IMG/VR virus record: IMGVR_UViG_3300050120_000230
Location: 351,410-415,409 of that record
Strand: one strand, 5' to 3'
DNA: 64,000 bases
The notes beneath the pieces are model-generated. The model had not been told where the DNA came from, ran no database searches, and saw nothing but the letters and a program-made list of their open reading frames with translations. Every line of letters starts with the position of its first letter. The stretch's first letter is position 1. Made by a program: the position numbers and the translations under genes. This document shows positions 16,538 to 52,765 of this stretch, one piece after another.

Positions 16538-17404
16538 TCACACCTTGGCGCCTTGGGCGCGGGCGAACGTCAGCAGTTTCTTGTCCAGTTCAACCAGATA
16601 GCCGCCGCCATACGGACCCTGTTCCAGATTGCGATAGAGCGCCGGGGGAAGATCGTCCGGCATCTCGGTCAAGCTCGCGGCGAACATTGCGATGGCCGAG
16701 ACCGTATCCACGTCCCCACCAAAGCTCACAGCGATCCGAAGAACTTCGCGCAGGCTGTTGCCGCGACGAACGGCGGTGATCGCGGCGTGAGCGCACGGGA
16801 TGCCTTGAACGCTGACCCATTCATCCCAATCTTCGTTCCACGCCCATCCCTGATGATGATCGCAGATAAAGTCGCCGACTTCGGATTTGGGACCGAGACG
16901 ATAGGCGAAATAGTGATTCATCAACGCAACAGCACAAGCCGCGCCCATGCCTTCGGGCGTATCGTGCGTGAGCATGGCTTGGAGAATTGAAAGTCTCTTG
17001 ACCATTTTCAGGTCTTTGTAGAGCCCAATCGGTCCCACCCGCATGGCTGCACCGCTGCGCGTGGAATTGGGATCGAGCCTTTGCAGAAGCTCTTCGCCGC
17101 TCTTCACAGTCGTGAGCAACTCATAGAAACGGCTGCCATACCCCTTGCGGGGATCGCGCGTGAAAGTATCGAACACCCGAGGCGCGAGTTCTTCTGGCAG
17201 GAACTCACCACCGGCCAGCAACGCTTCGGCGATGCAGATGGTCATCTGGGTGTCGTCGGTATACCGGCCACCGCCGATGTCGATCTCGGGGTGTTTGTAA
17301 TAGGTCTCCGTGTCGTTGACCATGCCCTTGGCTTTGGCAACTTCGGGCGTGACAAATTCCCAGCCCGCACCGTAGGCGTCGCCGAGGGCCATCTCAACCA
17401 GCAT
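16538..17404 (-). CDS. ADP-ribosylglycohydrolase (ARH/DraG family)
   Basis: GDAYG, TDDTQM, GAAMR, THD, GGDVDT motifs. Confidence 0.9.
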   Translation of the reverse strand: MLVEMALGDAYGAGWEFVTPEVAKAKGMVNDTETYYKHPEIDIGGGRYTDDTQMTICIAEALLAGGEFLPEELAPRVFDTFTRDPRKGYGSRFYELLTTVKSGEELLQRLDPNSTRSGAAMRVGPIGLYKDLKMVKRLSILQAMLTHDTPEGMGAACAVALMNHYFAYRLGPKSEVGDFICDHHQGWAWNEDWDEWVSVQGIPCAHAAITAVRRGNSLREVLRIAVSFGGDVDTVSAIAMFAASLTEMPDDLPPALYRNLEQGPYGGGYLVELDKKLLTFARAQGAKV

Positions 17405-17804
17405 GTATCGTTCTCCATCGAGACGCTTGCTCTTCGCGGCGTAGCCGTTCTTCGTGTTCTCGCACAGCCCGAGCCGCATCGCGTTTCTCTCGGGCGAGGG
17501 TGGCGCTGGACTTGATCCCGGTGAGGGGCAGACCGAGAAGTTCGCACACCTCATCGGTCATGTCTTCGATTTCGCAACCGCCGTTGAAATAATCGCACAG
17601 ACCAAGATAGAGGCCGTGCAGGAAATCTTCATCGGCCATCTCGCGAACGGAGGTGAACCGTTGGCGATTGGCGATCACGCCGCGCAGTTGGTTCGCATAG
17701 AGATAGGGGACATCGTCCAAAACTCGAATGGTCCACGCGCGGGCGATCTCACTGTCAATGCAGTGGTCGGTAGCAACGCCGGAGATCATCCAAACTTGTT
17801 CCAT
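17394..17804 (-). CDS. Hypothetical protein
   Basis: ORF overlapping ARH start. Confidence 0.55.
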   Translation of the reverse strand: MEQVWMISGVATDHCIDSEIARAWTIRVLDDVPYLYANQLRGVIANRQRFTSVREMADEDFLHGLYLGLCDYFNGGCEIEDMTDEVCELLGLPLTGIKSSATLAREKRDAARAVREHEERLRREEQASRWRTIHAG

Positions 17805-17853: not shown

Positions 17854-18504
17854 ATGTTCAGTATGCGCTACCTCGTAAATCTGGTGGATTCCTACGCCGA
17901 TGAGACCGACACAGTCGAGTCCACGCGTTTGGAAACCAACATTAATTTGGAAGTGGGTGCATTCAAAGACGAAAACGATCAACTGGCGGGCGAGTTTGTC
18001 ATCGACGATCCGGCTATCAGGAAAGCAATCAAACACTATACCCACGAGTCATCCATCAATGACGAACTCATCCGGGCTGAGGGTGACGTGTCTCGTCTGC
18101 CGGAAGATTCTCAGATCGAGTATAAGCAACTCATCAGCCTCAAAGGTGTGCCGATGGCCGAAGGTCATCATACCTACTGTGGCACAGGTACGTTCAATCC
18201 CATGGAAGTCACGCAAGGTGGCATCTTCCAGACCCCCGCCTTTCTCAGCACATCGCTTAGTCTGAAAGTTGCAGTCAAGACCACTAACTACAGACGGGAT
18301 CACGATCACGCGGTGGAAGATCACGTCATCCATTTCATCCTGCCGGAGGGTTTTGCCGGAGGTTTCTACGTGGCGCCATATTCCAACGATCCCGAAGAAC
18401 TCGAATATCTTGTCTTCCCGCAAGAAAACTTCCGGCACGTTGGATCACAGGTTCTTCCGCTAGATGGCGTAAAACGCCACGTTCATAGCTTCAAACCGAG
18501 TTGA
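17854..18504 (+). CDS. ADP-ribosyltransferase (VIP2/Alt-like exoenzyme domain)
   Basis: YT...IN..L, FLSTS and ELE motifs; TAAATA at 17843. Confidence 0.7.
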   Translation: MFSMRYLVNLVDSYADETDTVESTRLETNINLEVGAFKDENDQLAGEFVIDDPAIRKAIKHYTHESSINDELIRAEGDVSRLPEDSQIEYKQLISLKGVPMAEGHHTYCGTGTFNPMEVTQGGIFQTPAFLSTSLSLKVAVKTTNYRRDHDHAVEDHVIHFILPEGFAGGFYVAPYSNDPEELEYLVFPQENFRHVGSQVLPLDGVKRHVHSFKPS

Positions 18505-18950: not shown

Positions 18951-19664
18951 ATGGCTCTTTCGATTGAAGACAAAGCCCGTCTGGTTCAACTCTCTTCGGA
19001 CCTTTCTCCTGAAAATCTCCACTGCGACGGCGAGATCAGCCGCGCGGCGGCCGAGCGCAAGCGTAAGATAATCATGCGTGAGTGGCGCGAGCTTGAGGCC
19101 AAGCATGGCCAAGAACTCGACGAAGAGGATGCCTCGCGTTTCTTCAACGAAGTTCGTCGGTGGCGCGAGACACAACGCACGACCGAAATGGCCCAATTGC
19201 CGCGCCATCCTCTGGTCGCCAGCAAGAACCCCGGCGTCTACGTTCGCGAGGGCAAGAGCGGTAGCGCGGCCTATTACATCTGGGGTCCGGGTCATGGCAG
19301 CGCCGTCGAGTTCGAACTGTTCAGCGAGTTTGCCTACAAGTTCGGTCTGGCCGAACGGATCGCCAAGTTCAAGACGCTTGATCTGGCCGTCGAGGCGGGC
19401 GAAGCCTTCCTCGCCACGGTCGGCCCGGAAATGATCCTCGCCAAATATCCGCGCAGCACCCCCGAGACCATCAAGCGCGAGCTTGAGCGTCTGCCGGAAG
19501 GTTATGCCCCGGCGCTCCCCGAGATGCCGCCGGTGACCGGCTTCGATCTGCGGGTTGGTAACGAGGTGATCGCTCATAACGTGAAGGCCGAAGATGTCGG
19601 CGGCATTCTCGTCAAGACACTGATCGAGCGAGGCCAGCACTGCAACGTCACGTCGGTGGGCTGA
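18951..19664 (+). CDS. Hypothetical protein
   Basis: AGGAG RBS, strong codon bias. Confidence 0.7.
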   Translation: MALSIEDKARLVQLSSDLSPENLHCDGEISRAAAERKRKIIMREWRELEAKHGQELDEEDASRFFNEVRRWRETQRTTEMAQLPRHPLVASKNPGVYVREGKSGSAAYYIWGPGHGSAVEFELFSEFAYKFGLAERIAKFKTLDLAVEAGEAFLATVGPEMILAKYPRSTPETIKRELERLPEGYAPALPEMPPVTGFDLRVGNEVIAHNVKAEDVGGILVKTLIERGQHCNVTSVG

Positions 19665-19705
19665 ACTAGTTTGCGGGTGCCGAAAGGCATCCGCAAACAA
19701 AGTGG

Positions 19706-19900
19706 TTGACTATCCCTTAAACGCACACTAAATAGGTTTCATGACCTACTATTAGAACCACCTAACTGAACTCCTGAATTCGGCCACCCGCCGGACTTCG
19801 ACCGCTGCTGCGCGCATTCTGCGTGCCTCTGGTCAGTCCGCTGCGGGTTTTTTCATGTCCATTTTTCAGCCCGCCGCGCGTGACAACGCGAGCGGGTTTT
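19706..19900 (+). promoter_or_regulatory. Promoter plus putative attenuator: MTYY-amber uORF and two tandem terminators
   Basis: TTGACT-N17-TAAATA; ATG ACC TAC TAT TAG at 19741-19755; hairpin+U tracts at 19787-19853 and 19870-19900. Confidence 0.55.
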
Positions 19901-19923
19901 GTGCATTCAATCAAGGAATTACT

Positions 19924-20253
19924 GTGTCCAATCAACTGACTACCCAAGTCGATCTCGATGACGAGGACGACGATGACGATTTTGAAGACGCTTACGGCGA
20001 CATGCTCGGTGAAGAGCAATGGGAAGACAACCCAGCCGCCCAAAAGCTTTACGCGGCCATGCCCAAGGGCTGGGTGATGGTGAAGTGCGTGAACTTCACG
20101 TTCCGCTCGATGGGCGAGATGGAACGCTGGCTGAAAGCCGAATGCCGCTCCGACTACAAACAAGTCGGCTTCAAAACTGGATGTTCCTACAACGTCGCGG
20201 TCCAGTTCAAAGACATAGTGGACGCGACAATGTTCAAGCTTCGGTGGAGATAA
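19924..20253 (+). CDS. Small motif-family protein with acidic N-terminus
   Basis: AAGGA RBS before GTG; ends FKDIVDATMFKLRWR. Confidence 0.65.
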   Translation: MSNQLTTQVDLDDEDDDDDFEDAYGDMLGEEQWEDNPAAQKLYAAMPKGWVMVKCVNFTFRSMGEMERWLKAECRSDYKQVGFKTGCSYNVAVQFKDIVDATMFKLRWR

Positions 20254-20256
20254 GCA

Positions 20257-20562
20257 ATGCAGATCGAAGAAGGCATGATCGATGTTCCTCTAGTTCCCGG
20301 CCGGAAGCTCATGCGACCGCCGGAAATGGACCACAAAGATTTCATGCTGATGCAGAAATCCGAGTGGCCCGAGTTCCACAGAATAATCATTGGCCGGTGG
20401 TCTAGCGACTACCACAAACGAAAGGAGATCGATTGGTGGTGTAACGACAATATCTACGGTCGCTGGTTCCACAGCGAAGGATACGAAGTCTACTACTTTG
20501 AAAACGAAAACAGCGCGGTGCACTTCAAGCTGAAATGGTTCAGCGAAATCGCCGCAACTTAA
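20257..20562 (+). CDS. Small motif-family protein
   Basis: FENENSAVHFKLKWF. Confidence 0.65.
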   Translation: MQIEEGMIDVPLVPGRKLMRPPEMDHKDFMLMQKSEWPEFHRIIIGRWSSDYHKRKEIDWWCNDNIYGRWFHSEGYEVYYFENENSAVHFKLKWFSEIAAT

Positions 20563-20572
20563 GGAGATACCA

Positions 20573-20848
20573 ATGTCTATCGAAATCAACTTCACGAACC
20601 GCGAAACCTACATCACTTGGCGTGCCAATTGGCGAGCGGCCTACAAGGAATTGTCGGCCGAAATCCGCCAAGGCAAGCTGGCGCTGTCCAACGCCTTCCG
20701 GTCCAACGACCCGAAAGCTGGGGGCATCCAATCGGAACTCTCGTTCAACCGCAAGATGGCTGCGCGGATGATGGAGACCCGGATGGAGGCTAAGGAACTG
20801 GTCAAGGTCCAACGCGAGCAGCACTTCGCTGAGCAAAAGGCCGCCTAA
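20573..20848 (+). CDS. Helical hypothetical protein (paralogue of next gene)
   Basis: RBS; F.xRE.Y..W.A.W...YKELSA shared with 20999-21562. Confidence 0.7.
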   Translation: MSIEINFTNRETYITWRANWRAAYKELSAEIRQGKLALSNAFRSNDPKAGGIQSELSFNRKMAARMMETRMEAKELVKVQREQHFAEQKAA

Positions 20849-20853
20849 CCCGA

Positions 20854-20982
20854 GTATCCGGCCATAACCGGACATTGCCGGACATTTGCTGGACATCCCG
20901 TTCAGTAAATTATCCAGCAAAATCAATACATGTTTGGAAGTATCCGGCCGAAGCCGGACATAACCGGACATCAACCGGACAT
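20854..20982 (+). repeat. Two clusters of three CCGGACAT direct repeats
   Basis: Copies at 20868, 20878, 20889 (CTGGACAT), 20954, 20964, 20975; each cluster preceded by GTATCCGGCC. Confidence 0.8.
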
Positions 20983-20998
20983 CACAGGAGAAAACCAA

Positions 20999-21562
20999 AT
21001 GTCCGCAAACGCAATGAAACCCGGCTTCATCGACCGCGAGGGCTACCTCCGGTGGAAGGCTGAATGGAAACTGGTCTACAAGGAACTCTCGGCCCAGATC
21101 GCGGCCGGGAAGCGCAAGGTCGCTATCGCACACCGCGAGAATGATCCGGCGGCGCCTGAGATGCAGCGCGAGCTTCAATACAAGCGCGTCATGGCTCACA
21201 AGATGATGACGCTCATGGAAGAAGCCAAGCTGCGGCGGGATCGCATCCTTGAGATGCACAAGCAACTGGCCGAGCAGAACGCTCAGTTCCCGTTGGTGCT
21301 CGACGACTGCCGTATCATCGACTTCCACTTCAACAAGGGCTCGTTGGAATATCCGTTCCTGCCCATGTGGACGCTGAAGACGAAGGGCAAGTCGTTCTAC
21401 ATCAACCACATCGAAGCCAATATCCCGTGGAGCACGCGAGAGCTTCCCGAGGGTTCCACCCGTGGCATGATCCGTCTGCGTAATGGTGAGATCACCATCG
21501 ACGCCGAAGGCACGGCCACGATCAACCAGAAGGCGGTCAAGCCGATGCTGCAAGCTGCTTAG
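20999..21562 (+). CDS. Hypothetical protein (paralogue of 20573-20848 with C-terminal extension)
   Basis: AGGAG RBS before ATG 20999. Confidence 0.7.
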   Translation: MSANAMKPGFIDREGYLRWKAEWKLVYKELSAQIAAGKRKVAIAHRENDPAAPEMQRELQYKRVMAHKMMTLMEEAKLRRDRILEMHKQLAEQNAQFPLVLDDCRIIDFHFNKGSLEYPFLPMWTLKTKGKSFYINHIEANIPWSTRELPEGSTRGMIRLRNGEITIDAEGTATINQKAVKPMLQAA

Positions 21563-21628
21563 AAGGAACAGGTCAACTAATCCCCGGTCTCCGGGGTGAA
21601 CTTTTTCGGTCTCCCCGGAGACCAATAC

Positions 21629-21702
21629 GACGAGGTAGCTCAGGGGTTGAGCGTTTGGGCGTGAAGCTCGAAAGGTCGGTGGTTCGAATCCATCTCTCGT
21701 CA
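21629..21702 (+). tRNA. tRNA-like gene with 7-bp anticodon stem and GTGAA loop
   Basis: GACGAGG/TCTCGTC acceptor, GCTC/GAGC D-stem, GGTGG-TTCGAAT-CCATC T-arm. Confidence 0.65.
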
Positions 21703-21703
21703 C

Positions 21704-21810
21704 GGTCGAATAGCTCAGTGGTAGAGCAGCGCGATAATGGAGGGCTCCGATACGTAAGCGGTCCTGTGAAGTTATCGCGTGTGTCGGTGGTTCGAACCCA
21801 TCTTCGACTT
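21704..21810 (+). tRNA. tRNA-like gene with about 35 extra nt in the anticodon arm
   Basis: Canonical acceptor/D/T arms; 10-bp GCGCGATAAT/GTTATCGCGT stem enclosing 32 nt. Confidence 0.7.
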
Positions 21811-21820
21811 CTATTTTTCG

Positions 21821-21848
21821 TTGACGAAAAAATGTGATCCTCTATTAT
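21821..21848 (+). promoter_or_regulatory. Sigma70-like promoter
   Basis: TTGACG-N16-TATTAT ahead of tRNA genes. Confidence 0.55.
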
Positions 21849-21859
21849 GAGGTTGCGTT

Positions 21860-21972
21860 GATTCCGTAGCTCAGTTGGTAGAGCAGCGAACTCATCTAAT
21901 CCCTCCCATGAGGTTACGGGAGGTATTACTTAAATTCGCGGGTCCTCGGTTCGAGTCCGAGCGGAGTCACCA
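21860..21972 (+). tRNA. tRNA (possibly CAT anticodon) with 37-nt insert or intron in the anticodon loop
   Basis: GCGAA/TTCGC stem encloses 44 nt starting CTCAT and ending AA; encoded CCA. Confidence 0.7.
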
Positions 21973-21975
21973 AAT

Positions 21976-22063
21976 GCCCCCGTGGGCCGAGCGGTCGAAG
22001 GCCACGGTCTCTAAAACCGATGGAGAAATCCCAGCGCAGGTTCGAATCCTGTCGGGGGTGCCA
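21976..22063 (+). tRNA. Amber suppressor tRNA (CTA), type II, G73
   Basis: Loop CTCTAAA in CGGT/ACCG stem; long variable arm; GCAGG-TTCGAAT-CCTGT; CCA. Confidence 0.85.
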
Positions 22064-22064
22064 A

Positions 22065-22451
22065 TCAGAAAATCTGCCACCAGTGCTTCTTCACGGGCGC
22101 GGGCGGCTTCTGGTTCATCGGTACGAAGTCTGCCGGGGGTTTCGGATAGGACTTCGGAGGCGTGAGCTTTGCAGTCACAACATCCGCTTTCTTTTTCACC
22201 TTTGCCAGTTCCGCATCTTCCTTCTTCAGGTCGGCTTCGAGCGTGGCGATCTTCGCCGCATTGTCGTCGATCTGCTGTTGAGCATCGTTCAACTGGGAAG
22301 AGTTGGAGTTCGAAGTGTGGAGCGCCGTTTTTGCCCAGTCGCGAACCTTACTGAACTCGCTATTCGAGGTGAGCGAGCAATAGGTGAGCACCACGAGCAG
22401 AGCTATTCCCGTGCCGTAATGCTTCAGTTTCTTCTTGAGTTTGGTATCCAT
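22065..22451 (-). CDS. Membrane-anchored coiled-coil protein (spanin-like candidate)
   Basis: N-terminal TM, coiled coil, Pro-rich tail; TAAATA upstream. Confidence 0.55.
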   Translation of the reverse strand: MDTKLKKKLKHYGTGIALLVVLTYCSLTSNSEFSKVRDWAKTALHTSNSNSSQLNDAQQQIDDNAAKIATLEADLKKEDAELAKVKKKADVVTAKLTPPKSYPKPPADFVPMNQKPPAPVKKHWWQIF

Positions 22452-27317: not shown

Positions 27318-27936
27318 TCAAGGCGACAACGCCAGAAGCAGACGGTCGATGCCAATGGCCCAACCCACGCCTTCGGCGTATCGGCCGCCTCCGGCAATCT
27401 GCTTTTGTGCACCGAGCGCCGAACACTCAACCTCGAATCCATCCTCGACGTAGTAGGTCAAGCCACGCTTAACCGAATCGTTGAAGGTGTAATCTAGGCC
27501 GAGCTTGTCGAGACAGTTCCGCAAAAGCCCAGAGGCTTCATCGGCGCCATTCTCAACGTTCCCGAGAATTTCGATCCCAAACTGGGTGAACTCTCGATAG
27601 CGCCCGGCTTGCGGCCGTTCGTAGCGGTAGCAGCGGGAGACATAGAAAATGCGCTTGGAGGCACATTTCTTTGCCCACGACTCTCGCCAGATTTCCTGCA
27701 CCAGTCCAGTCACCTCGGGGATCAAGCAGACCGGGCGGCCTCCTTTGTCCTCGAAAGACCACATCTGATTCACGATCTCCGGCCCGGCCTTGTCAATGAA
27801 GGTCTGCTGACCCCACAAAGCCGGAAGAATTACTTCATCGAAGCCTGCTTCAATGAACCAACCCCCGGAGGATTTCGATGGTCTGGGTATAGGCTCTCGC
27901 CTCATCCCCTTCGATCAATCGTGTTCCACGCAACAT
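27318..27936 (-). CDS. hisS: Minimal histidyl-tRNA synthetase catalytic core; frameshift at G5 run 27866-27862
   Basis: MLRGTRL start after GGAG RBS; CLIPEVT, YRYERPQAGRYREFTQFGIE, RGLTYY, GGGRY, GWAIGIDRL. Confidence 0.75.
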
Positions 27937-41247: not shown

Positions 41248-42402
<1,155 letters not shown>

Positions 42403-51544: not shown

Positions 51545-52765
51545 TTGAGCGACCTATCTGATCCAGTCTACAAAGAGATCGTCACCGCTCGGGTGAAGCT
51601 GCTCTTCGAAAAGCCGTTCTTCGGCCAACTGGCCGCCCGCATGGTCGCCATCGAGGCGCCGTGGTGTAAGACCGCCGCGACCGATGGGCGCCATTTCTAC
51701 TACAATCGCGAGTTCATCAAGGGCCTGAACAAGGCCGAGCTTCTGTTCCTCATCGGCCACGAAGTCCTGCACTGCGTCTATGACCACCTTGGTCGGCGCG
51801 GCGGCCGTGATCCGAAGATTTGGAACATGGCGAACGACTACATCGTGAACTGGACCCTGAAGGACCAGCAAGTCGGCCAGATGCCGTCGATGGGTCTCTA
51901 TGACCCGAAATACACCGACGACATGCACTCGGAAGAGCTTTACGAGCTTCTGAAGAAGAACTCGGTCACCATCAAGATGCCGCTCGACGAACACCTCGAC
52001 GTGACGGGGCAAGAGGGCGACGGCGACGAAGATGGCAAGCAGCCCGGTAGCCAAGGCACGGTCGATGTGACCGTCATGGGCAAGGATGGCCCGCCGAAGC
52101 TGACCGAAGAAGACCTGCAAAAGATCAGGAACGAGATCAAGGCGGCGGTCATCCAAACCGCGCAGCAAGTCGGCGCGGGCAAGGTCCCGGCTGGCGTGCG
52201 TCGCATGATCCAAGAACTGATCGAACCCAAGATGGATTGGCGGGCGCTGCTCGACGCGCACATCCGATCCTCGATCAAGGACGACTACACGTTCCGCCGC
52301 ATCGGCCGCCGGTCGTGGGGTTCGGGCTTCGTGCTGCCCGCGCAGGACTTCATGGACACCATCGATGTGGCCGTCTCCATCGACGCGTCCGGCTCGATGA
52401 GCGAGACCATGCTGCGCGACATCCTCTCCGAGGTGAAGGGCATCATGCAGACCTTCCGCGACTTCAAGCTGAAGCTGTGGACGTTCGATACCGCCGTCTA
52501 TTCCTACAAGGAGTTCACGCCGGAGAACCTCGACGAGATCGACGAATACGCTCTCGGCGGCGGCGGCGGCACCCTGTTCGAATGCAACTGGGAACACATG
52601 AAGAAAGAGGGGCTTGAGCCCCAACGCTTCATCATGTTCACTGACGGCTATCCCGGCGGCTCGTGGGGCGAAGAGAACTACTGCGATACCCTCTTCGTGA
52701 TCCACGGCAACGACTCCATCGTCGCGCCGTTCGGTATGACCGCCTACTATGAGGCCAAGGACTGA
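51545..52765 (+). CDS. DUF2201-type metallopeptidase-VWA partner of the AAA+ ATPase
   Basis: TAATDG, HEVLH, WNMANDY, IDASGSM, GGGGT, FTDG. Confidence 0.88.
   Translation: MSDLSDPVYKEIVTARVKLLFEKPFFGQLAARMVAIEAPWCKTAATDGRHFYYNREFIKGLNKAELLFLIGHEVLHCVYDHLGRRGGRDPKIWNMANDYIVNWTLKDQQVGQMPSMGLYDPKYTDDMHSEELYELLKKNSVTIKMPLDEHLDVTGQEGDGDEDGKQPGSQGTVDVTVMGKDGPPKLTEEDLQKIRNEIKAAVIQTAQQVGAGKVPAGVRRMIQELIEPKMDWRALLDAHIRSSIKDDYTFRRIGRRSWGSGFVLPAQDFMDTIDVAVSIDASGSMSETMLRDILSEVKGIMQTFRDFKLKLWTFDTAVYSYKEFTPENLDEIDEYALGGGGGTLFECNWEHMKKEGLEPQRFIMFTDGYPGGSWGEENYCDTLFVIHGNDSIVAPFGMTAYYEAKD

What the first reader, a model, noticed from the sequence alone, without database searches (positions are those of the whole stretch)
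19706..22063. Second leader of similar layout: M-T-Y-Y-amber uORF plus two terminators ahead of the region ending in an amber-suppressor tRNA
Seen in sequence: TTGACT-N17-TAAATA, then 6 nt later ATG ACC TAC TAT TAG (19741-19755). Two CCCG...CGGG-TTTT terminators follow (19787-19853, 19870-19900), the same stem ends as in the Ser/Tyr/Cys/His attenuator. Past the TAG the frame stays open through both hairpins and joins gene 19924-20253 in frame. The downstream plus-strand run ends in three aberrant tRNA genes and a CUA tRNA. Inference: amber read-through, or stalling at Tyr-Tyr or the stop, could control termination and couple suppressor or RF1 activity to this operon. Caveat: a separate promoter at 21821 could drive the last two tRNAs independently.
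Basis: partly seen in the sequence, partly recalled or inferred. Interest (0 to 1): 0.75.

Follow-up and report, generated by a model that had tools for sequence, protein, structure and literature searches.

The report
Amber-codon-gated leader in a megaphage
A giant phage and its relatives keep a four-codon mini-gene ending in an amber (UAG) stop ahead of two transcription terminators, with the frame behind the stop kept open, so the phage's own amber-suppressor tRNAs probably decide whether the downstream genes are switched on.

Summary
The window belongs to a 415-kb fragment of a roughly 570-kb peat megaphage. A promoter (TTGACT-N16-CTAAAT) sits 7 nt before ATG ACC TAC TAT TAG. It belongs to a genome-wide promoter class that puts ATG 5-7 nt after the -10 element, which implies leaderless mRNAs.

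In 13 distinct leaders (the window plus 12 metagenomic relatives):
- The mini-ORF has 3-4 sense codons, and its stop is always TAG.
- The first terminator starts 28-31 nt after the TAG in 11 of 13.
- Both terminator hairpins are conserved, with compensatory changes.
- The frame after the TAG is stop-free to the gene start in 12 of 13. The other two frames carry stops in 25 of 26 cases.
- The frame is in phase with gene 1 in 10 of 13.

The Tyr codons are not conserved. Neither this phage nor a complete 578-kb relative recodes TAG genome-wide. The CUA tRNA pair has its own conserved sigma-70-type promoter.

Best reading: a pyrBI-like, ribosome-mediated antiterminator gated by amber suppression. 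Release at UAG lets T1 and T2 form. Read-through carries the ribosome across them into gene 1. No transcript, TSS or ribosome data could be obtained, so the mechanism is inferred. I rate it a new variant of leader-peptide attenuation, of high interest.

The parts
19706..19733 (+). Promoter: -35 TTGACT (19706-19711), 16-nt spacer, phage-type -10 CTAAAT (19728-19733)
   Evidence: Both hexamers are conserved in all the relatives whose contigs reach far enough upstream, while the spacer and the 6-8 nt before the ATG vary freely. The motif class is enriched genome-wide.
19741..19755 (+). Putative leaderless mini-ORF M-T-Y-Y-amber. The A of the ATG is the likely transcription start.
   Evidence: The ATG lies 7 nt after CTAAAT, as in 48 leaderless-type genes of this genome. 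Sequence conservation among relatives begins exactly at the ATG. TAG is invariant in 13 of 13 leaders.
19741..19762 (+). Conserved, G-poor, unstructured 5' block ATGACCTACTATTAGAACCACC
   Evidence: Alignment A2. Predicted unpaired or only weakly paired. The base before the TAG is always T, and the base after it is A in 12 of 13.
19756..19923 (+). Read-through frame: 56 sense codons crossing T1 and T2, in phase with gene 1
   Evidence: Stop-free to the gene start in 12 of 13 leaders, against 25 of 26 closed alternative frames. P(open) in shuffles is 0.11-0.39 per leader. There is no 3-periodicity in the substitutions.
19786..19853 (+). Terminator T1: long hairpin 19786-19847 plus U6
   Evidence: The base of the stem and the U run are conserved, with compensatory pairs, in 11 leaders. 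It starts 28-31 nt after the TAG in 11 of 13.
19868..19900 (+). Terminator T2: hairpin plus U4
   Evidence: Present in all 13 leaders, with covarying pairs, for example AU in 6 and GC in 5 at one position.
19913..20253 (+). SD AAGGA (19913-19917) and gene 1 (GTG 19924-20253, 109 aa, acidic N-terminus, unknown function)
   Evidence: 25 homologues at 65-99% identity, one of them the window's own product. No Pfam or PHROG hit. The model has a small alpha/beta fold with no informative match.
20257..20848 (+). Genes 2 (20257-20562, 101 aa) and 3 (20573-20848, 91 aa), unknown function
   Evidence: Syntenic in the relatives. By inspection of the sequence, gene 3 resembles the N-terminal half of gene 4; this was not aligned formally.
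20849..20998 (+). Intergenic region with 5 exact CCGGACAT repeats and ATCCGGCC repeats around an AT-rich core
   Evidence: Conserved in 7 relatives. Possibly an operator or internal promoter, so gene 4 may not depend only on the leader.
20999..21562 (+). Gene 4 (187 aa): long helical hairpin plus a small beta-barrel, unknown function
   Evidence: A distant homologue exists in Sinorhizobium phage Phosso.
21582..21625 (+). Two GC hairpins after gene 4, the first followed by a short T run: a leaky terminator or a processing site
21629..21810 (+). Two tRNA-like genes with abnormal anticodon arms: t1 (21629-21703) and t2 (21704-21810)
   Evidence: t1 orthologues follow gene 4 in L070, L071, L075, L076 and L079. 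A t2 orthologue is present in L072.
21821..21848 (+). Separate sigma-70-type promoter TTGACG-N16-TATTAT for the CUA tRNAs
   Evidence: An equivalent TTGACC/G-N16/17-TAnnnT stands before the CUA tRNA pair in all 8 loci inspected for it, and in L079 as well.
21860..21972 (+). t3: class-I tRNA(CUA) interrupted by a 37-nt hairpin insert (21894-21930) within the anticodon (CTC|insert|TAAA)
   Evidence: With the insert removed it is 91% identical over 57 nt to an intact CUA tRNA of G001, and it shares its anticodon arm with those of L067 and L072.
21976..22063 (+). t4: intact class-II tRNA(CUA), long variable arm, G73
   Evidence: Class-II orthologues in L072 and L076; class-I versions with the same acceptor and anticodon arms in L067, L070, L079 and L080.

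Best explanation
This is an amber-suppression-gated, ribosome-mediated transcription attenuator.

1. Transcription starts at or next to the A of ATG 19741, giving a leaderless RNA. This step is inferred.
2. A 70S ribosome translates Met-Thr-Tyr-Tyr and meets UAG.
3. If a release factor (RF1) wins, the ribosome leaves about 31 nt before T1. That is too far to hinder the hairpins, so T1 and its back-up T2 stop RNA polymerase and the operon stays off.
4. If the phage's tRNA(CUA) wins, the ribosome goes on in an open frame across T1 and T2 behind the polymerase and keeps the hairpins from forming. It is delivered to gene 1 either in phase, as an N-extended protein, or by terminating within about 30 nt of the gene's start codon.

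The tRNA(CUA) genes are t4 (intact) and t3 (interrupted by an insert). They are expressed from their own promoter. The module therefore reports the suppressor/RF1 balance and switches on genes 1-3, and perhaps gene 4 and the two tRNA-like RNAs.

What is shown: the anatomy and its conservation. What is inferred: the transcription start, translation of the mini-ORF, read-through, and the effect on termination.
For: 1. Promoter class and leaderless geometry. Of 136 [ACG]TAAATA motifs, 48 have ATG 5-7 nt after the TAAAT opening a real-sized ORF, against 3 of 79 controls. The complete relative G001 shows the same, 57 of 175. In the leaders the -35 and -10 are conserved and the 6-8 nt before the ATG are free, and conservation starts at the ATG.

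2. TAG is invariant in 13 of 13 leaders, although only 21% of this genome's genes end in TAG. The sense codons vary: MTYY, MTNR, MNHR, MPYR, MSY.

3. The frame after the TAG is stop-free to the gene start in 12 of 13. In the thirteenth it ends after T2, 14 nt before the start. The other frames carry stops in 25 of 26 cases. Shuffles give P(open) of 0.11-0.39 per leader, and the product over five independent leader types is about 8e-4.

4. Leader lengths differ (138 to 201 nt), yet 10 of 13 are multiples of 3. The three exceptions end the read-through frame at -14, +11 and +29 nt from the start codon.

5. Substitutions show no codon periodicity, so what is kept is passage of a ribosome, not a peptide sequence.

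6. T1 and T2 are conserved with compensatory changes and U runs.

7. The TAG-to-T1 distance is 28-31 nt in 11 of 13. In E. coli a ribosome at a stop codon stops repressing a terminator beyond about 27-30 nt, and moving the stop to within a few bp of the terminator cuts its efficiency from about 90% to under 10% (PMC4824070).

8. CUA tRNAs with their own conserved promoter lie within about 1.5 kb of the operon in 9 of 13 loci.

9. There is no genome-wide TAG recoding that would otherwise explain the suppressors.

10. The same phages carry leaderless mini-ORFs rich in Arg or Thr codons just ahead of tRNA-Arg and tRNA-Thr genes.
Against: - No transcript, 5'-end, Term-seq, Ribo-seq or proteomic data exist. 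No RNA run could be listed.
- T1 ends only about 112 nt from the presumed start, so a ribosome must load and catch up very fast. In PMC4824070 terminators in the first ~100 bp of a coding region could escape ribosomal repression unless the polymerase pauses. No pause site could be tested here.
- The -10 lacks the canonical final T, and which RNA polymerase or sigma factor uses it is unknown.
- Leaderless translation efficiency in the unknown host is not known.
- One of the two CUA tRNA genes in this phage is interrupted by a 37-nt insert.
- Three of 13 leaders are out of phase with gene 1.
- In the L068/L073 type the first hairpin is weak.
- Relatives share ancestry, so the 13 leaders are not 13 independent trials.
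- The CCGGACAT-repeat region suggests an internal promoter, so the extent of the regulated unit is uncertain.
Confidence: 0.5

Rival explanations
1. Programmed amber read-through that makes two protein isoforms. The real point would be an N-terminally extended gene-1 protein, started at the leaderless ATG and needing tRNA(CUA), alongside the SD-initiated 109-aa form. In this reading the hairpins are mRNA structures, and control of termination is secondary or absent.
For: 10 of 13 leaders are in phase with gene 1 despite different lengths. Gene callers annotated extended products of 126-156 aa in several relatives.
Against: Three lineages are out of phase, yet they still keep the frame open across the terminators. 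The extension shows no codon-periodic conservation. Its conserved residues are simply the translated terminator arms and U runs. GC hairpins followed by U runs are conserved as structures.
Confidence: 0.15
2. Promoter-proximal terminators overcome by a phage antiterminator, Q/N/put-like or a phage RNA-polymerase property. The conserved 5' block would be an RNA or DNA recognition element and the mini-ORF would not be translated.
For: The layout (strong promoter, short transcript, terminator, then genes) resembles lambda PR'-tR'. The conserved block extends 7 nt beyond the TAG (AACCACC), which a pure coding argument does not require.
Against: It does not explain why the stop is always TAG, why the frame after it is stop-free in 12 of 13 while the other frames are closed in 25 of 26, or why lengths are multiples of 3. 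No known cis-regulatory RNA family matched.
Confidence: 0.15
3. Classical stall-type attenuation or an RF1 sensor. A ribosome waiting at a 'hungry' UAG (low RF1, low suppressor) would change folding or RNA-polymerase pausing and so raise or lower termination, giving negative feedback on amber decoding.
For: The other leaders of this phage carry codons matching the downstream tRNAs, as in amino-acid operon attenuators. The phage has an RF1-type gene. The TAG-to-T1 spacing is constant.
Against: No conserved antiterminator or anti-antiterminator pairing was found. A ribosome at the UAG is 28-31 nt from T1 and should not touch it. The CUA tRNAs are not in the regulated unit. The open frame remains unexplained.
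Confidence: 0.1
4. The promoter plus T1 make a stable small RNA of about 110 nt as the main product, comparable to lambda oop or 6S RNA. Gene 1 would be expressed only by leaky read-through.
For: A strong promoter, a very stable hairpin and a U run define a discrete short transcript.
Against: The interior of T1 is poorly conserved and varies greatly in length; the distance from the TAG to the end of T1's U run ranges from 65 to 98 nt. T1 is absent or weak in the L068/L073 type. The frame and phase constraints are unexplained.
Confidence: 0.07

Closest known systems
E. coli pyrBI (and pyrE) attenuators
   Same: The leader ORF runs through an intrinsic terminator. A ribosome close behind RNA polymerase prevents the hairpin from forming. 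No alternative antiterminator structure is required (textbook knowledge; cited in PMC4824070).
   Different: In pyrBI the input is UTP-dependent polymerase pausing. Here the gate is a stop codon at codon 5 (codon 4 in L074) that must be read by a suppressor tRNA. The mRNA is leaderless, there are two terminators, and the frame is mostly in phase with the first gene.
trp/his/thr/leu-type leader-peptide attenuators
   Same: A short ORF with 'regulatory' codons, followed by a terminator, followed by the operon. Sister leaders in this phage carry codon runs matching the downstream tRNAs.
   Different: No conserved 2:3 antiterminator was found. The regulatory codon is a stop. The expected response is reversed: efficient decoding gives read-through transcription.
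Mycobacterial polycysteine leaderless short-ORF attenuators (bioRxiv 10.1101/834739; background in PMC4633059)
   Same: A leaderless short ORF serves as the first cistron and controls the downstream operon through its translation (abstracts).
   Different: Those sense Cys-tRNA supply at sense codons in a bacterial chromosome. This one is in a phage, has 3-4 sense codons, and is gated by UAG.
prfB (RF2) autoregulatory in-frame UGA
   Same: An early in-frame stop codon acts as a sensor of the termination-versus-alternative-decoding balance (established knowledge, from memory).
   Different: prfB uses a +1 frameshift and acts on translation only. Here the frame does not change, and terminators are placed in the read-through frame.
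Stop-codon-recoded phages with suppressor tRNAs (bioRxiv 10.1101/2021.08.26.457843; PMC9523058)
   Same: A phage-encoded tRNA(CUA) is proposed to time the expression of phage genes (abstracts).
   Different: There is no genome-wide TAG recoding here or in a complete relative. In the two genomes scanned, only this leader pairs a leaderless mini-ORF ending in TAG with a read-through frame that reaches a gene; in the window's genome that frame is 165 codons long.
Lambda PR'-tR' / Q antitermination
   Same: A promoter-proximal terminator lies ahead of the genes it controls.
   Different: No Q-like element was identified. The coding-frame constraints point to the ribosome rather than a polymerase modifier.

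Membership tests
Ribosome-mediated transcription attenuator (leader-peptide type) | A short ORF at the 5' end of the transcript, ahead of the structural genes | tested here: met
   ATG 19741 to TAG 19755, conserved in 13 leaders.
Ribosome-mediated transcription attenuator (leader-peptide type) | An intrinsic terminator between the leader ORF and the first gene | tested here: met
   T1 and T2 hairpins with U runs, showing covariation.
Ribosome-mediated transcription attenuator (leader-peptide type) | Mutually exclusive antiterminator and terminator pairings (trp type) | tested here: not met
   No conserved alternative helix appears in the single folds or in the alignment fold.
Ribosome-mediated transcription attenuator (pyrBI type) | The leader reading frame extends through the terminator | tested here: met
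   Met only if the UAG is read through. The frame is then open across T1 and T2 in 13 of 13 leaders.
Ribosome-mediated transcription attenuator (any type) | Termination depends on translation of the leader | not testable with these tools
   No RNA runs could be listed. This needs reporters or in-vitro coupled assays.
Leaderless mRNA | The transcript starts at or within a few nt of the AUG | tested here: inconclusive
   The geometry fits: the -10 ends 7 nt before the ATG, there is no SD, and 48 genes share the layout. Conservation starts at the ATG. No 5'-end mapping exists.
Stop-codon-recoded phage (TAG as sense, code-15-like) | Many genes carry in-frame TAG, and coding density is low under the standard code | tested here: not met
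   Coding density is 89% under code 11. Read-through extensions after TAG resemble those after TAA and TGA. Only 8 in-frame TAG-joined neighbouring gene pairs were found, each with a start codon from 3 to 69 nt after the TAG. G001 behaves the same.
Stop-codon-recoded phage (TAG as sense, code-15-like) | A phage-encoded suppressor tRNA(CUA) | tested here: met
   t4 is intact and t3 is interrupted. Most relatives have pairs of CUA tRNAs.
T-box or other known cis-regulatory RNA | A match to a curated covariance model | tested here: not met
   Rfam scans at gathering and permissive thresholds found only tRNA in 19650-22100.
Lambda Q-type promoter-proximal antitermination | A Q-like protein with its binding or pause element at the promoter | not tested
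   No search for Q-like proteins was made. Only the promoter-then-terminator layout is shared.

The most novel reading that the evidence does not exclude
These megaphages may use their own amber-suppressor tRNAs as a trans-acting inducer rather than as part of a recoded genome. A UAG at codon 5 of a leaderless leader would turn the suppressor/RF1 balance into a transcriptional on/off decision. This amber leader would be one member of a genome-wide set of leaderless mini-ORFs (Arg, Thr, Ser/Tyr/Cys/His, Leu/Arg/Lys, Ile/Val/Ala and others), each reading out the cell's decoding capacity for the codons served by the neighbouring phage tRNA genes. That would amount to a translation-sensing regulon for a phage that brings almost its whole tRNA set.
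Probability: 0.35. Interest if true: 0.9.

Novelty: new variant of a known kind. Interest (0 to 1): 0.8.

Why it matters
Phage suppressor tRNAs have so far been explained by genome-wide stop-codon recoding. Here they occur in a clade of ~570-kb phages that does not recode. The clearest conserved in-frame UAG found sits in a leader built like an attenuator.

If the model holds, three things follow:
- It gives suppressor tRNAs a regulatory function.
- It adds a stop codon to the list of 'regulatory codons' used in attenuation.
- It offers a compact, orthogonal switch (UAG plus terminator plus suppressor tRNA) for synthetic biology.

It also points to a wider, undescribed system in which huge phages monitor decoding capacity through leaderless mini-ORFs placed ahead of their tRNA genes.

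Tried and rejected
- **Close phage relatives in INPHARED.** Only two short, irrelevant matches. The Phosso locus is not syntenic.
- **IMG/VR scans.** Scans with gene 1, with the upstream gene and with the exact leader sequence gave nothing syntenic. The gene-4 relative L003 is not syntenic either. The metagenome scan only re-found L070. The useful relatives came from the protein search, the contig look-ups and one profile scan of IMG/VR with alignment A1, which found L078.
- **Genome-wide TAG recoding.** Rejected for this phage and for the complete relative G001.
- **Tyr-Tyr stalling.** Rejected, because the Tyr codons are not conserved.
- **Peptide-level selection on the read-through extension.** No codon periodicity.
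- **trp-type alternative pairing.** None is conserved.
- **Known RNA families.** Only tRNA matched.
- **Function of the regulated proteins.** Pfam, PHROGs, the ESM Atlas, two AlphaFold models and four fold searches gave nothing informative.
- **RNA-seq evidence.** No RNA run could be listed. Only DNA runs were found, from a peat and a freshwater metagenome.
- **Complementarity of AACCACC to the GGTGGTT T-arm of t1 and t2.** Noticed, but not testable, and treated as coincidence.


Full report
**Where the window comes from.** The window is bases 351,410-415,409 of a 415,409-bp IMG/VR phage contig. CheckV puts it at 72% complete, GC is 55%, and the DNA is held by a peat metagenome run. ARAGORN finds 52 tRNA genes. 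Relatives include contigs of 568-578 kb, one of them complete with terminal repeats (G001, 578,292 bp, 69 tRNAs). This is therefore a roughly 570-kb 'megaphage'. A tmRNA-like gene in two-piece layout and a weak match to a Sinorhizobium jumbo phage hint at an alphaproteobacterial host. That host assignment is not established.

**The observation.**
- TTGACT lies at 19706-19711. TAAATA lies at 19729-19734, which reads better as CTAAAT at 19728-19733 with a 16-nt spacer.
- ATG ACC TAC TAT TAG lies at 19741-19755.
- T1 is a long hairpin at 19786-19847 followed by U6. T2 is a hairpin at 19868-19898 followed by U4.
- The only stop between ATG 19741 and the stop of gene 19924-20253 is the TAG, and the two are in phase, 183 nt apart.
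- GTG 19924 has a good Shine-Dalgarno sequence (AAGGA, 6 nt upstream). The ATG at 19741 has none.

**The promoter is real and implies a leaderless RNA.** A generic sigma-70 scan missed it, but the element belongs to a phage-specific class.
- [ACG]TAAATA occurs 136 times in the genome. In 48 cases an ATG lies 5-7 nt after the TAAAT and opens an ORF of at least 40 codons. Control motifs give 3 of 79.
- The complete relative G001 shows the same pattern, 57 of 175.
- A subset of 13 promoters also has a TTGAC -35 element, against 2 in a reversed-sequence control. This subset includes the promoters of the tRNA clusters, the tmRNA-like gene, an RF1-like gene and our leader.
- With the -10 ending 7 nt before the ATG, the transcript should begin at or next to the A of the ATG.

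**Comparative evidence.** Gene 1 (109 aa) has 25 homologues at 65-99% identity, one of them the window's own product. I recovered 12 further distinct loci with their upstream DNA.
- *Promoter conservation.* The -35 and -10 are conserved wherever the upstream DNA is available, while the spacer and the 6-8 nt before the ATG vary freely. Conservation begins exactly at the ATG.
- *The mini-ORF.* It reads MTYY in nine leaders, then MTNR, MNHR, MPYR and MSY in one each. The stop is TAG in all 13, although only about 21% of this phage's genes end in TAG.
- *Stop-codon context.* The base before the TAG is always T. The base after it is A in 12 of 13. From memory, that is the context that favours amber suppression in E. 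coli.
- *Terminators.* T1 and T2 are conserved as structures, with compensatory changes and U runs. T1 begins 28-31 nt after the TAG in 11 of 13 leaders, even though its own length varies widely.
- *The open frame.* The frame that continues from the TAG has no stop up to the gene-1 start in 12 of 13 leaders. In the thirteenth it ends after T2, 14 nt before the start. The other two frames carry stops in 25 of 26 cases. Shuffling gives P(open) of 0.11-0.39 per leader. Taking only five clearly different leader types as independent, the product is about 8e-4.
- *Phase with gene 1.* The distance from the ATG to the gene start is a multiple of three in 10 of 13 leaders (138, 153, 171, 180, 183, 183, 189, 189, 192, 201 nt). 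The three exceptions end the read-through frame at -14, +11 and +29 nt from the start codon.
- *What is being selected.* Substitutions show no codon periodicity. What is preserved is an unobstructed path for a ribosome, not a peptide.

**The tRNAs.**
- t4 (21976-22063) is an intact class-II tRNA(CUA).
- t3 (21860-21972) is the orthologue of an intact class-I tRNA(CUA) in the relatives, but it carries a 37-nt hairpin insert inside the anticodon loop, arranged as CTC|insert|TAAA. In L071 the other CUA tRNA carries a 24-nt insert at the same place.
- t1 and t2 are conserved tRNA-like RNAs with abnormal anticodon arms.
- The CUA pair has its own TTGACC/G-N16/17-TAnnnT promoter in all 8 loci inspected for it, and in L079 too. 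In several relatives opposite-strand genes lie between it and the operon. The suppressors are therefore an input to the leader, not its output.

**No recoding.** Under the standard code the coding density is 89% in this genome and 89.5% in G001. Read-through extensions after TAG look like those after TAA and TGA. In-frame TAG-joined neighbouring genes are not enriched. A scan for leaderless mini-ORFs found this leader to be the only one ending in TAG whose read-through frame reaches a gene, 165 codons long in the window's genome. It also found the Thr leader in both genomes and the Arg leader in G001; the window genome's own Arg leader had been found earlier.

**Mechanism.** The best fit is a pyrBI-like attenuator gated by amber decoding.
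- If release happens at the UAG, the ribosome is left about 30 nt short of T1. Experiments on lambda tR2 in E. coli showed that a ribosome at a stop codon ceases to repress the terminator beyond about 27-30 nt. Moving the stop codon to within a few bp of the terminator cut its efficiency from about 90% to under 10% (PMC4824070).
- If tRNA(CUA) reads the UAG, the ribosome crosses T1 and T2 and arrives at gene 1.
- The phage's RF1-type gene has a PPT recognition motif and a GGQ motif, lacks domain 1, and carries a conserved in-frame TGA. It would oppose the suppressors, so the leader could integrate both activities.

The weak points are these. T1 lies only about 112 nt from the presumed start, so fast leaderless initiation or polymerase pausing is needed. 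The polymerase and sigma factor that use this promoter are unknown, as is the host. No expression data of any kind exist. I give this model about 0.5. The rivals are two-isoform read-through, a protein antiterminator acting on an untranslated RNA element, stall-type sensing of RF1, and a small RNA product. All are listed with their tests.

**What the operon does** remains unknown. None of the four proteins gave an informative sequence or fold match. A conserved array of CCGGACAT and ATCCGGCC repeats between genes 3 and 4 suggests a second, protein-controlled entry point.

**Novelty.** Ribosome-mediated attenuation, leaderless regulatory short ORFs (10.1101/834739) and phage suppressor tRNAs (10.1101/2021.08.26.457843) are each known. 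I found no description of a stop codon serving as the regulatory codon of an attenuator read by a phage suppressor tRNA, nor of leader ORFs ahead of phage tRNA operons. I file this as a new variant of a known kind, with high interest.

Noticed in passing
Whole genome. Window examples: CTAAAT/GTAAAT motifs at about 2889 (+), 7060 (+), 11240 (-), 17842 (+), 22463 (-) and 26759 (+): A phage-specific promoter class, [ACG]TAAATA, places an ATG 5-7 nt after the TAAAT in 48 genes. This implies widespread leaderless mRNAs. Many of these genes start with MR(D/E)(F/W)I.., suggesting a paralogous family. The class is also present in the complete relative G001.
   Followed up: partly
Window about 29670-29380 (-). 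Genome positions 52400 (+), 162120 (-), 166584 (+), 268983 (+). G001 positions 42172 (+) and 262203 (-).: Leader mini-ORFs carry codons that match the tRNA genes just downstream. Examples: a Ser/Tyr/Cys/His-rich leader before the Ser, Tyr and His tRNAs; an Arg-rich leader before tRNA-Arg(UCU, CCU); a Thr-rich leader before tRNA-Thr; a Leu/Arg/Lys-rich leader; and an Ile/Val/Ala/Thr/Pro/Phe/Gln/Asn-rich leader. The Arg and Thr leaders are leaderless, and the same idea is conserved in G001 with different sequences. This looks like attenuation control of phage tRNA operons, which I did not find described.
   Followed up: partly
Window 21894-21930 (inside t3); L071:7117-7215; genome about 269,170-269,340: Short hairpin-containing inserts of 37, 24 and about 100 nt interrupt the anticodon loops of otherwise normal tRNAs. 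Two are CUA suppressors, interrupted at the same position, and one is a Thr(UGU)-like tRNA. The inserts are far smaller than group I introns. They could be mini-introns, a regulatory block, or decay.
   Followed up: partly
Window 21629-21703 (t1) and 21704-21810 (t2). Orthologues at L070:5226-5306, L075:5295-5373, L079:2741-2817, L071:6487-6564 and L072:5184-5294.: Two conserved tRNA-like RNAs have normal acceptor, D and T arms but abnormal 'anticodon' arms: 5-9-nt loops containing GUGAA or UGAA in t1, and a stem extended by 4-5 extra base pairs with a large loop in t2. They always follow gene 4. Function unknown.
   Followed up: partly
Genome 265,441-266,1xx (+), outside the window; G001:29997-30266 region: The phage encodes a release-factor homologue of RF1 type (PPT motif, GGQ) that lacks domain 1. 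It has an in-frame TGA at codon 36, where Trp is expected. The TGA is also present in the 578-kb relative. Its promoter is of the same TTGAC-plus-CTAAAT subtype as the amber leader.
   Followed up: partly
Window 20849-20998: Five exact CCGGACAT repeats plus one variant, together with ATCCGGCC repeats, flank an AT-rich core between genes 3 and 4. They are conserved in seven relatives. This is probably a protein-binding array or an internal promoter.
   Followed up: partly
Genome about 112,180-111,800 (-), outside the window: Behind a TTGACT-N17-CTAAAT promoter lies a tmRNA-like gene in two-piece (permuted) layout, with a tRNA-like 3' end followed by a tag reading frame ending ...YALAA*. ARAGORN did not call it.
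   Followed up: no
Window 16538-17554 (-), 17854-18504 (+), 27318-27905 (-): An ADP-ribosylglycohydrolase and a weak ADP-ribosyltransferase (ADPrib_exo_Tox) homologue lie side by side and are syntenic in relatives. A 195-aa fragment resembling the HisRS catalytic core sits among the tRNA-His genes.
   Followed up: no
Window 19670-19699: A 13-bp GC hairpin with no U run lies directly upstream of the -35 element of the leader promoter, after the stop of gene 18951-19664. It is not conserved in relatives, whose upstream genes differ.
   Followed up: no
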